From assembly GCA_024704765.1 (NCBI GenBank), contig JAKMXF010000038.1, forward strand, positions 1 through 58,984: a stretch of 58,984 nt of DNA. Direction: 5' to 3'. This stretch comes from Oopsacas minuta. Lineage: Eukaryota; Animalia; Porifera. The notes beneath the pieces were generated by a model. It saw only the letters and a program-made list of their open reading frames with translations. It ran no database searches and had not been told where the DNA came from. Within the stretch, counting starts at the first letter, position 1. Each line of letters starts with the position of its first letter. The position numbers and the translations under genes were made by a program. Positions 1 through 52,800 of this stretch are shown piece after piece.

Positions 1-1011
1 TCTGTTGGTTAGAACGTGATCTGAATTGAACACAAACATACACGGATCACTCTGATCTAGCACCAATACTCTGTCTCTTGTAACCTTAACGTCATATGGA
101 TGGTTAAACAAGTCTATTCCTAGCATGGAATGGAACTTGAATTCTTGAGTTAAGATTTGAACTCTTTTATTATTATAATCACATACATACACATTGCTAT
201 TTCTATCAGAGACATCTAGTCCGTGTGGACCGTTGAACTGAGCTTCTCCATTCCCATAATTGCCAACACTCTTGATTAGTTTCCCTTCTAGCTCGTACTT
301 ATTAATACAATGACCACACCATTGTGTAACAAACACTTTATTCTGAGTTATACAGATACCTATAGGTAGGTTCATCTTCTCACTGAACATGAAGAGATAG
401 TCTCCGTTACAGCTAAATACTTGTACATGATCGTTGCTCATATCCGCTATGTATATGTCTCCAGTTTGGTTAAGAACTGCTATACATCTGGGACGGTTCA
501 GTTCTCCTGGAGCTTTCTTGTCTGAATTCTTACAGTAGTAAGCAGTAGGCAGCTGTTTAGCCTTATAGTCAGGTACAACAAGCTTCACTTGAGGAGGGAA
601 GGTGTGGGTGGGAGATATGTTAGTCTGACTGTTAAGCTTAATACTCCCTAGCTGTTCTATCTCAGTCTCAAATTGATTGTTCCATTCAAACTCAATGGTA
701 ATGTCTGTATCATCTGTTAGTTCTGTCAGTTTGCTGTCAAGTGGAGTGACAACTTGTTCTCTAGTATTAGTCAGTTCATTTGCTTTCAGGTTCTCTACGG
801 CTGAAGATTTGACATTTCTTAAAGACTCACTAATTTCTTTTCGTAATTTCATTTTATGATTGTATTCATACTCTATGTTATCAACATGAGATAAGAGATT
901 ATTCTCTCTCGCTATTAATGCTTCATGAGATTTCTTGAATCTGTCTTTTATCTTTCTCCGAGTTTCACTTATCTGTTCTGTGAATTCTATTCTGGGATTA
1001 GCGACTGCCAT
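1..1011 (-). CDS. Coiled-coil + NHL-repeat protein, copy 1 (TRIM-NHL-like, no RING/B-box); 3' end runs off the window
   Basis: Minus-strand ATG at 1011 (MAVANPRIEFTEQISETRRKIKDRF...). The open frame continues through NHL blades (ELNRPRCIAVLNQTGDIYIADMSNDHVQVF; [30 protein letters not shown]) to position 1. Clear paralogue of 4457-5725. Confidence 0.9.
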   Translation of the reverse strand, partial: MAVANPRIEFTEQISETRRKIKDRFKKSHEALIARENNLLSHVDNIEYEYNHKMKLRKEISESLRNVKSSAVENLKANELTNTREQVVTPLDSKLTELTDDTDITIEFEWNNQFETEIEQLGSIKLNSQTNISPTHTFPPQVKLVVPDYKAKQLPTAYYCKNSDKKAPGELNRPRCIAVLNQTGDIYIADMSNDHVQVFSCNGDYLFMFSEKMNLPIGICITQNKVFVTQWCGHCINKYELEGKLIKSVGNYGNGEAQFNGPHGLDVSDRNSNVYVCDYNNKRVQILTQEFKFHSMLGIDLFNHPYDVKVTRDRVLVLDQSDPCMFVFNSDHVLTNR

Positions 1012-2064
1012 TTTCACTTAGTTTTACAAAATAAATTACTATAACATATAACTGGATAAATATACTAATTTCTTAACCTGCATACATACTATGTAATTCT
1101 ATCTTTTAGTCTGATTGCGTGAGAATTAATTATGGTCAGGTTCAGTCAGGGTTATACGTAGGGCAAAATAATATTTTCTTTGTTTTGTCGCCTGTCATGC
1201 CATATTTGGCCCCCACCAAAGTTGTTCCGACCCAACCATATTTGACGTCATGGATGGTCCCTCTGGTTGTGTTGTATGGATGCCAGGCTAGTTGCAGGTT
1301 GCGTAATTGGGTGTTTTCTAGCTTGATCTGGGTGTTAAATGGGATATTTTTCTCCAATTATTTACTAATTCTAATGACCAGGTTAATTGAGTGATTTTAT
1401 TACTGTTACCCTTTGGCCTTGGTAATTACTTGCAAGCTTGTAATAAACATCGTGACGAGCAATTTTATATAATAAATAGAGGGGAGGGGGTACCAAATAT
1501 GGCAGGGGGATCATCCGTGGTACCATATATGGATTGTCTGGCCGAACCAAATATAGCGTGGCACGCCACACATTATACATTTAGTATATGGACACTATAT
1601 ACGATATTACAAATATGAAATATGGGAGCCGGAGCTATTAATACATTTTCCATAGGCACTTCGTCGTAAGGAAACTTCTAAAATGCTACGTAATTAAATC
1701 CTTTTCTTAATTTCACTGAAACATTCGTATTGTAAAAATGAATGTTATGAATACATTGGTTTTGATTATTTTATTGCCTCAAACCATTCAAATTCATTCC
1801 GTGTGTATATTTTCATTCATTTTCTACACATGAGTTTATTGATATTTGAAGTATAAATTAACTCATAAAATAACGGTCAGCACTAGCGGCCTGTCGTCTC
1901 TCGATTGTGTTTGTATAATCCCCCAAAGGAAGATTCCCTACTAGCATGGTGGATGAATGGACGTACTTCTGCACAAGTCTTATTTTCACATATTTCGAAA
2001 GATCAACTTATCTGTGTTTTTTAATCAACAATTTAGAATTTGAAATCTCGGTTTGAAATTACAA

Positions 2065-49800: not shown

Positions 49801-52800
49801 GACCATACAATTGTGTAACAAACACTTTATTCTGAGTTATACAGATACCTATAGGGTTGTTCATCTTCTCACTGAACTTGAAGAGATAGTCTCCGTTACA
49901 GCTAAATACTTGTACACGATTGTTCCCATCCGCTATGTAAATGTTTCCAGTTTGGTAATGTACTGCTATACCTGTGGGATTGTTCAGTTCTCCTGGAGCT
50001 TTCTTGTTTGATTTCTTACAGCAGTAAGCAGTAGGCAGCTGTTTAGCCTTGTAGTCAGGTACAACTGGCTTCACTTGAGGAGGGAAGGTGTGGATGGGAG
50101 ATATGTTAGTCTGACCGTTAAGCTTAATACTCCCTAGCTGCTCTATGTCAGTCTCGAATTGATTGTCCCATTCAAACTTAATACTACTGTCTGTATCAGC
50201 TGTTAGTTCTGTTATCTTCTTGTCAATAGCTGATTGAATTATTTGTTGAATGTCAGTGAGTTTATTTGCGGAGAATATCTCTGTGGTGTGTGTTATTTCT
50301 TTATTCAAAGTTTCAACTAATTTATTCACTTCTTGAGTTTTGCTATTATAATCATTCTCTATTTGATCAATACGAGAGAGGAGGATACTCTCTCTGAGTT
50401 GTAGAGCTTCATGTGACCTCTTGAAGCAGTATCTAATCATCTTTCTACTCTCTTTTACTTGTTCGATAAAGTTTCTATTCACTGCTACGCTAGCCATTTC
50501 TTAGAGAGGAATTCTACTCAAATCAAGATTGATTTAATATATACTTTAATTGACCTAATAGTATTATACAATACACATACAAAATACATAGAATTGTTTT
50601 ACTCATTATAACCATCACTCGTAATATTATCCCCATCTCTTATTTCATATGTATAATTTCAATTATAATATTGATTGCGTATAGGCGAGGTCTATACTTT
50701 AGCATTAAGGAAAGTTCTGATAATTCAAGAATGAATTCGCCTCTCAATTCTAAAAGCTTAATTTCCCAGTAGTTTAGCCAGATATAAACAGAGGTAACTA
50801 CGAAATTTCTTACCTAACTTACTCAGTTAGTGGCATCTTATATCTGATTATTCAATGATTTTTTAGGCAGTGCTGAATTACACGCCATACTGTTCTATGT
50901 AATACTCTATTCCAGCTGTTCTCAACCTTCTCCACCCGTGTACTGCCTATGCCAATTTTTAACACATTCTGTGGTGCCCTTCCATAGACTTTTGATATTA
51001 TGTGAACCACCAACGGTCCATGAATCCCAGATCGTTGCGCTATCTCTTATTAGTTCATTGAAATGCATTGTAGATCTAAGATTTGAATTTGGAGAAATTC
51101 AGTATATGAAGTTATGTACTAAATACCACACTATCCCGTGATGTTAATAAATATCTCAAAACTCATGAGGTCATATATATTATATCACACAAATTTCGCC
51201 TCAAGGACTCTCCCATTAGTTGTTTTGAATATGTATTGAATACGTATTTAGTTAGCAAAGCATTCAGTCACACAATAATCCATTTTTGGTTAATCGGAAC
51301 TTGAAACTCTGAGCTGAAGCCGCTTACATTGGATAAACTGTACATGTACGCGTTTGCCCCAAATACACTGTATCTGCTGTATCTTTACTACTAATAATGC
51401 TAATGCATATAGCTTGCAAACATTGGTAGCATAATTCAGCCCAATTGTTTCTACAATATTTCCTGATAATATATACCATATTTCTTATATATTTTCATAT
51501 AACGTTTGAAAATACAAATGATTTTGGAAATCTGATTATAACTTTACTAAAATACAAATAATATCAATCACATAATTCAAAATGCATAAGCAAACAAATT
51601 GTGTGTTTTCGTATATTTATTAGTTTGTTGTTTGTCTGCGAGTTTGTAAGTTTATTTGTTGTTTTGTATATTTTTGTTATTTGTTTCCTTTTTTCTAACT
51701 CCTTAATTCGTATTAATATTATCAAATAAATTAGATTGAAGGTTCTAGTGAGGTGAAAGAGAGAGCTGTTGACCTGAAGAGGAGAGTATCAAAATTAGAA
51801 TCTCTCATAGCTAATATTTCAGCTCCGAACATGAAAGCAATGCAAAGGTATTTTAATACAGATGGGTTATATCCAGGCTATATACGGTCATGAATCTCGT
51901 ATACTAAAATATTCAAAATAACTCATTGTATCAAATTCTTCTGTAGACAAATACACATTACTACTATATTACACATGTTGGCAGCCTTCGAAAATGTCCT
52001 CCTAGATTCTATAGTATTGTTTCTATGCATTTCGCTAATCCGAACGAATTCTTATGCAATTGGAACAGTGCTGTTCGGATTAGTGAGGATGTACTGCATA
52101 ATCAATAATCCATGAAAATACACATAACATCCTTAGTTTTTTAATACATTTGGCAGAACTACTGGGACGTTTCATTCCATGGCATTCCACTAATCCATGG
52201 TAGGTAACTGCCGCTTGGTAAGATTTGCAATATTATCAAAACCTCGCTTGAATTAATTATTTCTATTAGACTAGATGGAGTTGAGAATAAGGTTAACGAG
52301 ATTAATGCTGAGCATGAAGCAGCCAGAATTTCTGCAAAAAAATCTAAAGCTGAGTTCGAACAGATTAAAAAGAAAAGGTTTGTGAATTGTTTAAATCAAT
52401 TCTCTTTACATTGGAGCCTGTAATATTAATGGCTACTGTAGAGTTATGTGTAGATGATGGCTATAGCTTGGCTGTCGTGGCGTCGTGGCCGAGGAGCTTA
52501 GAGGAAGCACTACCATGCAAAACTATATCATAATATGTTTCCAATTCATGTATCCAATATACGTATTAAGATTTATTCATGAATACCCTCAGTCACAGCC
52601 TCCGTATAATTCTGTATAACCTACGTCACAAATCGTATTGCATTCTATATTTATCTCAGAATTATTAATATTGTATATTCTATAAATACGAAAATTTATT
52701 ATACTTCACATAGATGTTATCTTTTCAATGCGTCTTTTGACCACGTTTCAACTCAAATAGATCCAATTTACAAGGTAACTAACAGCAGACATAGACTCTA

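What the first reader, a model, noticed from the sequence alone, without database searches (positions are those of the whole stretch)
1..50497. Six dispersed NHL paralogues with a frozen scaffold but hypervariable residues at two spots per propeller blade: a candidate diversifying recognition repertoire
Seen: across copies 1-6 the beta-strand cores are almost invariant in DNA (e.g. [42 protein letters not shown]), while changes pile up at the same two positions in each blade. Listed for copies 1/2/3/4/5/6. Blade 1: RPRC/CPRG/CPRG/YPTG/CPKG/NPTG and D-MSNDH/HYNNC/YCNDR/MNNNR/MLNHR/G-NNR. Blade 2: Q-WCG/YHG/CDS/WQG/WSG/LYG. Blade 3: NGPH/SFLY/NGPH/SFPN/LHPH/SYPQ and C-DYN/ESN/DFT/DCS/DCH/EYS. 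Blade 4: NHPY/NHPR/KYPC/KYPR/KHPC/KSPR. Copies 2-6 only, blade 5: NPCC/YPCC/FPYC/NPLR/FPLC; blade 6: INPL/INPW/YYPW/SYPF/INPW. Established: in Brat and LIN-41/TRIM71 the residues around the blade-start Pro and just after the second strand form the top face that binds RNA or ligand. Inference: this RING-less coiled-coil+NHL family is under diversifying selection on its binding face, as expected for an innate-immune, antiviral or allorecognition repertoire in an early-branching animal.
Basis: partly seen in the sequence, partly recalled or inferred. Interest (0 to 1): 0.88.

Follow-up and report, generated by a model that had tools for sequence, protein, structure and literature searches.

The report
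Sponge propeller proteins with fast-changing face
A glass sponge carries many copies of a small six-bladed disc protein whose frame hardly changes, while the residues that touch a partner change faster than silent DNA sites, the usual mark of a recognition repertoire.

Summary
The window holds six coiled-coil+NHL copies. Three are intact, one is cut by the window edge, one has lost its coiled coil, and one carries a premature TAA. They belong to a family with 725 protein hits, in Oopsacas minuta and at least two other unnamed assemblies.

Amino-acid changes pile up at two spots per blade. Site models of my own give omega about 6 for about 9% of sites. The test is significant on 25 copies, on each blade with its own tree, and on the six window copies alone. 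A tree-free test, with sites chosen from other species, gives hot-site dN about 5 times the propeller dS and 1.6 times the coiled-coil dS.

All selected propeller sites lie on one face, in D-to-A and B-to-C loops and never in bottom loops. They sit at the same within-blade positions as the RNA-contact residues of LIN-41/TRIM71. Silent variation is barely raised at hot codons, so they are not mutation hot spots.

- Copies are mosaics: recombination is detected, and the propeller tree groups copies by species even though some copies sit in matching positions.
- Silent sites of the linker and propeller are 3 to 10 times less diverged between three species than in neighbouring genes. This is unexplained.

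Function, ligand and expression remain untested. The scan has noted this family before on other DNA.

The parts
1..1011 (-). Copy c1: coiled coil, linker and blades 1-4. The ORF is open for 337 codons and runs off the window start. Its 5' flank up to 1106 is shared with c2.
4457..5725 (+). Copy c2, intact (422 aa). It is a recent inverted duplicate of c1: coiled coil 98-99% identical and 95 bp of shared 5' flank from 4362. It lies between two conserved + strand ORF blocks and is absent from that interval in a second species.
10458..11366 (+). Copy c3, a 302-aa ORF. The start codons (MATAD) join directly to the linker, so the whole coiled coil is lost in frame.
15759..17027 (+). Copy c4, intact (422 aa), directly downstream of Med10. 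A copy sits in the same position in the second species.
23287..24558 (-). Copy c5, full length except for one in-frame TAA at codon 77 (24328-24330). It is a likely pseudogene or an N-terminally shortened product.
49235..50497 (-). Copy c6, intact (420 aa), used as the reference. Coiled coil 50138-50497, linker 50006-50137, propeller 49238-50005.

Best explanation
The six genes belong to a large, germline-encoded family of probably cytosolic binding proteins in glass sponges. I infer a cytosolic location only from reading the N-terminus; no signal-peptide predictor was run. Each protein has a TRIM-like coiled coil, inferred to form dimers, then a conserved linker and a six-bladed NHL propeller.

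The propeller frame is held nearly constant by purifying selection and by exchange of sequence between copies (gene conversion or recombination). About 25 residues change under positive diversifying selection: two or three around the proline that starts each blade, and one or two just after the second strand. These residues form one face of the disc, the face that contacts RNA in LIN-41/TRIM71. Each copy therefore presents a different binding surface on the same scaffold.

New copies arise by local duplication (c1 and c2). Others decay (c5 has a stop; c3 has lost its coiled coil).

Shown here: the architecture, the excess of amino-acid change over silent change, its position on the fold, and mosaicism between copies. 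Inferred: that the variable face binds variable ligands such as foreign RNA or protein or non-self determinants, that the family acts as a recognition repertoire, and that the coiled coil and linker couple binding to an unknown output.
For: Family and fold:
- NHL (PF01436) and DUF5128 (PF17170) match; no RING or B-box.
- 725 related proteins. The best 120 are 71-84% identical and 414-439 aa long; the named ones are all Oopsacas minuta.
- AlphaFold model: propeller pLDDT about 90, helices at residues 10-104.
- Best structural matches are the NHL domains of TRIM71/LIN-41 bound to RNA, then Thin, TRIM2/3 and Brat. By sequence TRIM3 and TRIM2 come first.

Selection:
- 25 copies: M0 omega 0.80; M2a vs M1a 2dlnL = 471, omega2 = 6.3, p2 = 0.09.
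- Each blade with its own tree: 2dlnL = 21-62.
- Six window copies alone: 2dlnL = 67, omega2 = 8.3.
- 14 hot columns defined from 95 proteins of other species; 13 of them are also M2a sites. In O. minuta DNA they give dN 0.87, against propeller dS 0.17 (ratio 5.1, bootstrap 3.9-6.6) and coiled-coil dS 0.54 (ratio 1.6, bootstrap 1.2-2.1).
- At hot codons, positions 1 and 2 vary more than position 3, the reverse of every other region.
- Pairs with the same residue differ in codon 11.6% of the time at hot codons against 8.8% elsewhere.

Place on the fold:
- All selected propeller sites lie in D-to-A loops, the first residues of strand A, or B-to-C loops. None lies in the 53 bottom-loop residues (p = 2e-10).
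- The 14 RNA-contact residues of zebrafish LIN-41 (PMC5908797) occupy positions -2, -1 and +1 around the blade-start proline and +1 and +2 after the strand-B aspartate, by the blade alignments. These are the sponge hot positions.
- Hot sites are rich in Tyr (4.4x); Trp occurs only there; His and Arg are also enriched.

Turnover and exchange:
- PHI test: 0 of 1000 permutations reach the observed value.
- c1 and c2 share a coiled coil but have different nearest propellers.
- Propellers cluster by species (support 100) although copies sit in matching positions in a syntenic locus of a second species.
Against: - No ligand, binding assay, induction or allele data exist.
- Per-copy expression could not be read. 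The runs are kept as contigs of unknown kind, and paralogue k-mers pile up.
- Silent sites of the propeller are themselves unusually conserved. Omega against local dS is therefore inflated. Against the coiled-coil dS the excess is only 1.6-fold, and the coiled coil may have an older genealogy.
- Recombination can inflate likelihood-ratio tests. This is mitigated, not removed, by per-blade trees and the tree-free test.
- One of the six copies is broken and one lacks the coiled coil.
- Only 25 of the many copies were analysed at the DNA level.
Confidence: 0.6

Rival explanations
1. A diversified set of post-transcriptional regulators. Like the TRIM-NHL proteins Brat, LIN-41 and Mei-P26, each copy binds a different endogenous RNA, and the fast change reflects paralogues acquiring new housekeeping or developmental targets, not conflict with parasites or non-self.
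For: The closest structures and sequences are RNA-binding TRIM-NHL propellers. The hot positions equal the LIN-41 RNA-contact positions.
Against: - The copy number is very high.
- Copies are gained and lost between species at the same locus.
- Pseudogenes and truncated copies occur.
- Nearly every hot patch is unique among 29 O. minuta proteins.
- Hot residues are not especially basic: about 16% K+R against 9% D+E.

These features fit conflict-driven repertoires better than stable regulators.
Confidence: 0.2
2. Relaxed constraint only. The loops of a recently expanded family drift neutrally while the strands are constrained, with no positive selection.
For: Surface loops are usually the least constrained part of a propeller. 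Family-wide omega is below 1 (0.80).
Against: - The nearly neutral model is rejected in every data set.
- Hot-site dN exceeds every silent-site measure, including that of the older coiled coil.
- Bottom-face loops (53 residues) hold no selected site.
- Codon positions 1 and 2 vary more than position 3 at hot codons.
Confidence: 0.05
3. Targeted mutation. The hot codons are mutational hot spots or targets of a templated diversifying process, so their variability is generated rather than selected.
For: The variable codons sit at fixed places in an otherwise DNA-conserved frame, which superficially recalls templated systems. The silent-site conservation of the frame is unexplained.
Against: - Silent variation at hot codons is barely raised: 11.6% against 8.8% of same-residue pairs.
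- The codon spectrum includes Trp, Met, Lys, Gln and Glu and shows no single-base bias such as adenine-only change.
- No reverse transcriptase or template copy lies next to the genes in the window.
Confidence: 0.05
4. Self/non-self (fusion or cytoplasmic incompatibility) determinants of a syncytial animal, analogous to the fungal het-type WD40 propeller genes, rather than pathogen sensors.
For: From my own knowledge, glass sponges are syncytial. The fungal HNWD genes combine a DNA-conserved propeller frame, exchange between repeats, and positively selected top-face positions. That is the pattern seen here.
Against: - No allele data.
- Incompatibility systems usually rest on a few highly polymorphic loci, not many fixed paralogues.
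- No NACHT or STAND, HET or death-type effector domain is attached.
Confidence: 0.1

Closest known systems
TRIM-NHL proteins (LIN-41/TRIM71, TRIM2/3, Thin, Brat, Mei-P26)
   Same: They share the six-bladed NHL propeller preceded by a coiled coil. TRIM3 and TRIM2 are the best sequence matches (E = 5e-37 and 4e-35). TRIM71 bound to RNA is the best structural match (target TM 0.86). The ligand-contact positions of LIN-41 are the sponge hot positions.
   Different: The sponge proteins have no RING, B-box or filamin domain, so they are not tripartite-motif proteins. TRIM-NHL genes are, from my own knowledge, few and conserved regulators. This family has very many copies whose binding face changes fast.
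Expanded TRIM families with hypervariable B30.2/SPRY loops (fish finTRIM, primate TRIM5alpha); from my own knowledge
   Same: They have a coiled-coil dimer scaffold carrying a C-terminal binding domain. The surface loops are under diversifying selection, and the families are multi-copy and lineage-specific.
   Different: The variable domain there is B30.2/SPRY, not NHL, and those proteins keep the RING and B-box. They are vertebrate families with a shown antiviral role; none is shown here.
Fungal HNWD/NWD het genes (Podospora WD40 propellers); from my own knowledge
   Same: A beta-propeller frame is kept near-identical at the DNA level by exchange between units. A few positions per blade on the top face are under positive selection.
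   Different: The fold there is WD40, not NHL. The exchanging units are repeats within a gene, not whole-gene paralogues. Those genes have STAND NTPase and effector domains, which are absent here.
Other germline-diversified invertebrate recognition families (plant and animal NLR leucine-rich repeats, sea urchin Sp185/333); from my own knowledge
   Same: These are large, fast-turning-over families with a conserved frame, variable patches and recombination between members.
   Different: The folds are unrelated. Here the variable positions are strictly periodic on a propeller face.

Membership tests
NHL-repeat six-bladed beta-propeller (Pfam PF01436 / PF17170) | NHL repeat profile matches above the curated cut-off | tested here: met
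   PF01436 scores 62-84 bits against a cut-off of 20 in all five complete propellers. PF17170 scores 40-50 bits against 22.9.
NHL-repeat six-bladed beta-propeller (Pfam PF01436 / PF17170) | Six four-stranded blades closing into a propeller | tested here: met
   The AlphaFold model has 23 strands in six blades, with pLDDT about 90 over residues 170-410. Foldseek target TM is 0.81-0.86 to solved NHL domains.
TRIM / RBCC (tripartite motif) proteins | N-terminal RING finger | tested here: not met
   There is no RING hit in Pfam. The ORFs start 0-10 codons before the helix, with stops upstream. The start context is conserved across copies and species.
TRIM / RBCC (tripartite motif) proteins | One or two B-box zinc fingers | tested here: not met
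   No zf-B_box hit.
TRIM / RBCC (tripartite motif) proteins | Coiled coil following the zinc fingers | tested here: met
   Helices are predicted at residues 10-77 and 81-104. Atlas structural matches to TRIM71 models extend over residues 1-420. Dimerisation was not tested.
RNA-binding TRIM-NHL propellers (LIN-41/Brat type) | Top face binds RNA through residues around the blade-start proline and in the B-C loop | not testable with these tools
   Positional equivalence is shown; binding is not. Hot residues are about 16% K+R and 9% D+E, so the face is not uniformly basic.
Diversifying recognition repertoires (operational class) | Amino-acid change exceeds silent change at sites on the binding face | tested here: met
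Diversifying recognition repertoires (operational class) | Expression, induction on challenge, and allelic polymorphism | tested here: inconclusive
   One run (X4) has a gene-limited, RNA-like depth profile and covers the unique 5' part of c1. The runs are contigs of unknown kind, and paralogue depth is summed. Polymorphism was not tested.
Templated hypermutation (diversity-generating retroelement type) | Variable codons differ from a template only at one kind of base; reverse transcriptase nearby | tested here: not met
   All bases vary at positions 1 and 2, and Trp, Met, Lys, Gln and Glu codons are present. No reverse transcriptase was found among the window ORFs scanned.

The most novel reading that the evidence does not exclude
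The linker and propeller form a DNA-level cassette. Their silent sites are held nearly constant across at least three glass-sponge species (dS 0.11-0.37, where neighbouring genes are saturated). Conservation is strongest at the two edges of the module. On this reading, sequence identity itself is needed, for example as homology arms for continual exchange of variable patches or whole propellers between copies, or as a shared RNA-level control element. That would make this a germline patch-shuffling recognition system on an NHL scaffold, not merely a family under positive selection.
Probability: 0.2. Interest if true: 0.88.

Novelty: new variant of a known kind. Interest (0 to 1): 0.76.

Why it matters
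Sponges have no known variable recognition proteins comparable to vertebrate TRIM5/finTRIM, plant NLRs or fungal het genes. This family would add the NHL propeller to the short list of folds used as a constant frame with a fast-evolving binding face. It occurs in one of the earliest-branching and least-studied animal classes, which is also syncytial.

The family gives concrete targets: about 25 defined positions per protein, and intact copies with unique faces. These can be used for binding screens, expression studies after infection or tissue contact, and population surveys.

The cross-species conservation of silent sites next to hypervariable codons is a separate puzzle. It bears on how large gene families keep a common frame.

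The two glass-sponge genome papers I read do not mention NHL proteins, and three full-text searches found no paper on such a family.

Tried and rejected
- A seventh copy near 56011 is a chance FSEKM match.
- The ORF at 36225-37646 looked propeller-like by eye but is unrelated (hhalign probability 0.6%).
- Codon bias does not explain the low dS. Third-position composition of the propeller is only mildly shifted, with C at 0.21-0.23 against 0.10-0.20 in other genes, cyclophilin included.
- An overlapping reading frame does not convincingly explain the silent-site conservation. Only stop-free antisense stretches of about 55-67 codons occur, at the same places in all copies, as expected from shared sequence.
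- Templated (adenine-directed) mutagenesis is rejected on the codon spectrum.
- Trans-species coiled-coil subfamilies were not seen. Among the 120 best proteins, both domains cluster by source, with 2-3 label changes.
- Read laying for expression was inconclusive. Three runs look like DNA and one like RNA, all are contigs, and depth over the shared frame is 30-85 times single-copy depth because paralogues pile up.
- Literature searches for the family found nothing relevant.
- I could not name the two ENA assemblies (ERZ25071281, ERZ25072730).
- No model coordinates were available, so the face assignment rests on strand topology and on the LIN-41 alignment, not on measured solvent exposure.
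Full report
**What is in the window**

Motif and ORF scans find six related genes:
- c1: 1-1011 (-), cut by the window start after blade 4.
- c2: 4457-5725 (+).
- c3: 10458-11366 (+).
- c4: 15759-17027 (+).
- c5: 23287-24558 (-).
- c6: 49235-50497 (-).

c2, c4 and c6 are intact at 420-422 aa. c3 keeps the first five codons and then runs straight into the linker, so the whole coiled coil is lost in frame. c5 is full length except for a TAA at codon 77, at 24328-24330.

The copies lie among ordinary genes: GDP-glucose phosphorylase, ATG8, Med10, CFAP161, an SMC protein, a Ras-like GTPase, a LRRK/ROCO kinase, cyclophilin and a xylosyltransferase-like enzyme. Similarity between copies ends 15-95 bp outside the coding sequence.

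**What the proteins are**

Pfam finds NHL repeats and the six-bladed propeller model DUF5128, and no RING or B-box. The AlphaFold model of c6, built on 121 sequences, has these parts:
- two long helices (residues 10-77 and 81-104);
- a low-confidence linker (about residues 122-165);
- a confident six-bladed propeller (pLDDT about 90).

By sequence the propeller is closest to TRIM3 and TRIM2 (E = 5e-37 and 4e-35), then Thin, TRIM71, Brat and Mei-P26. By structure it is closest to TRIM71/LIN-41 bound to RNA (8j72, 6fq3; target TM up to 0.86). The proteins are therefore TRIM-NHL-like but lack two of the three parts of the tripartite motif.

**Family size and host**

A protein search returns 725 relatives. 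The best 120 are 71-84% identical and 414-439 aa long (nearly all 420-424). The named ones are all from the glass sponge Oopsacas minuta; the rest are unnamed ENA assemblies. Fetched loci show copies scattered among unrelated genes on many O. minuta contigs, and some small arrays.

The two glass-sponge genome papers that I read do not mention NHL proteins. Three further full-text searches found nothing on such a family. This scan had already noted the same family on other pieces of this genome: 31 notes, two of them followed up.

**Is the variation more than relaxed loops?**

I built a codon alignment of 25 copies: 6 from the window, 14 from other O. minuta loci and 5 from a second species. 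I then fitted codon models with code of my own.
- Over linker plus propeller, one-ratio omega is 0.80.
- The selection model M2a beats the nearly neutral M1a by 2dlnL = 471. About 9% of sites have omega = 6.3, and 26 sites have posterior above 0.9, 25 of them in the propeller.
- Recombination is present (see below), so I refitted each blade with its own tree. All six blades are significant (2dlnL = 21-62) and give the same sites.
- The six window copies alone give omega 0.89 overall, 2dlnL = 67 and omega2 = 8.3.

I also ran a tree-free check that avoids choosing sites from the tested data. I picked the 14 most variable columns from 95 proteins of the other species; 13 of them are also M2a sites. 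In O. minuta DNA these columns have dN = 0.87. That compares with dS = 0.17 for the propeller (ratio 5.1, bootstrap 3.9-6.6) and dS = 0.54 for the coiled coil (ratio 1.6, bootstrap 1.2-2.1).

At hot codons, positions 1 and 2 differ more often than position 3 (0.51 and 0.49 against 0.35). Every other region shows the opposite. Among pairs with the same residue, codons differ in 11.6% of cases at hot codons and 8.8% elsewhere, so the hot codons are not mutation hot spots.

**Where the sites lie**

I used the strand assignment of the model. All 25 selected propeller columns fall in D-to-A loops, in the first two residues of strand A, or in B-to-C loops. By propeller topology these share one face. 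None falls in the 53 residues of A-to-B and C-to-D loops (Fisher p = 2e-10).

Kumari et al. 2018 (PMC5908797) list 14 residues of zebrafish LIN-41 that contact RNA. In the blade-by-blade alignments of c6 with TRIM71 these residues sit two before, one before and one after the blade-start proline, and one and two after the aspartate that ends strand B. The residue letters and spacings match the numbering.

Hot sites are enriched in Tyr (4.4x), His, Arg, Ser and Cys, and all Trp of the propeller are there. I know this composition as typical of binding sites. Nearly every hot patch of the window copies is unique among the 29 distinct O. minuta proteins at hand.

**Exchange between copies, birth and death**

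The PHI test detects recombination: 0 of 1000 permutations reach the observed value, both for the whole gene and for linker plus propeller.

c1 and c2 are a young inverted pair. Their coiled coils are 98-99% identical, dS there is 0.04, and they share 95 bp of 5' flank. Yet from the linker onward each is closer to other paralogues than to its twin. Their coiled coil is only 53-66% identical to any other copy, while their propellers are ordinary family members.

A 21-kb locus of a second species (ENA ERZ25071281) is syntenic with window 1-17000. It has an NHL copy upstream of GDP-glucose phosphorylase, one or two between the coiled-coil gene and Med10, and one after Med10. Even so, propellers cluster strictly by species and form a star-like tree within each (support 100). 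That is the pattern of concerted evolution.

c2 lies in an interval (3895-6091) that holds no NHL gene in the second species. A third species (ERZ25072730) has no copy anywhere in this syntenic stretch, although it has the family elsewhere.

**An unexplained feature**

Between species, the neighbouring single-copy genes are saturated at silent sites. Across the three species pairs, pS is 0.62-0.81 and four-fold sites differ at 0.50-0.71. In the O. minuta versus second-species comparison the coiled coil of the NHL genes is similar (dS = 1.34).

The propeller has dS of only 0.33-0.37 and the linker 0.11-0.15, in all three species pairs. Linker four-fold sites are as similar between species as within one (0.10). 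Conservation is strongest at the linker and start of blade 1 and again at blade 6.

Exchange between copies cannot lower divergence between species under neutrality. Codon composition is only mildly unusual, and no convincing overlapping frame exists. Some constraint on the DNA or RNA itself, a lower mutation rate, or gene flow must therefore be involved. I could not tell which.

One consequence is that omega measured against local dS is inflated. The comparison with coiled-coil dS (1.6-fold) is the conservative figure.

**Expression**

Four public runs of one sample hold the stretch. Three have flat, DNA-like depth. One (X4) has gene-limited depth and covers the unique 5' part of c1 at about a quarter of the depth of the neighbouring gene. 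All four are stored as contigs of unknown kind, and depth over the shared frame is 30-85 times single-copy depth because paralogues are summed. Expression of individual copies is therefore not settled.

**Verdict**

The most likely reading is a germline-encoded repertoire of probably cytosolic coiled-coil/NHL binding proteins, each with its own face, kept on a common frame by constraint and exchange between copies.

Its biological role is inferred only. It could be defence against foreign RNA or protein, self/non-self discrimination in a syncytial animal, or diversified RNA regulation. It is a new variant of a known kind: a diversified recognition family on a scaffold not known to be used this way.

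Noticed in passing
L011:6843-8048 and L011:8733-9422: In the third species, two genes (401 and 229 aa) match only the coiled-coil module of the family (55-61% identity over residues 1-132). Their C-terminal parts have no Pfam hit, so the coiled-coil module seems to be combined with other domains.
   Followed up: no
L003:6273-7441 (= L006:17967-19135): A FLYWCH/MULE transposase-like gene and a PAX/HTH fragment sit between NHL copies in an O. minuta array.
   Followed up: no
L003, L005:1784-3052, L006: One subfamily shares at least 120 bp of 5' flank and at least 150 bp of 3' flank across two different contigs. The duplicated unit there is larger than the coding sequence, like a cassette or segmental copy.
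   Followed up: partly
L001:14647-15072 and L001:21176-21272: The second species has two Med10 genes, each followed or preceded by NHL copies. This suggests a tandem duplication of an NHL-Med10 unit.
   Followed up: no
window 47202-47280 and 58886-58964; 25016-25120 and 54140-54239: Two short dispersed repeats unrelated to the NHL genes: 79 bp at 97% identity and 105 bp at 78%.
   Followed up: no
L002:1914-2861: A second coiled-coil-less copy in O. minuta starts inside the linker, as c3 does. The linker may be a recurrent breakpoint.
   Followed up: no
L007:930-2129: A distant NHL paralogue (28% identity to c6, 372 aa) lies on the same contig as a family member, so other NHL families exist in this genome.
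   Followed up: no
window 120-165 of the codon alignment (c6: 50006-50137): The linker is predicted disordered (pLDDT below 50), yet it is the most conserved part of the gene at both protein and silent sites. It may be a docking motif or a nucleic-acid-level element.
   Followed up: partly
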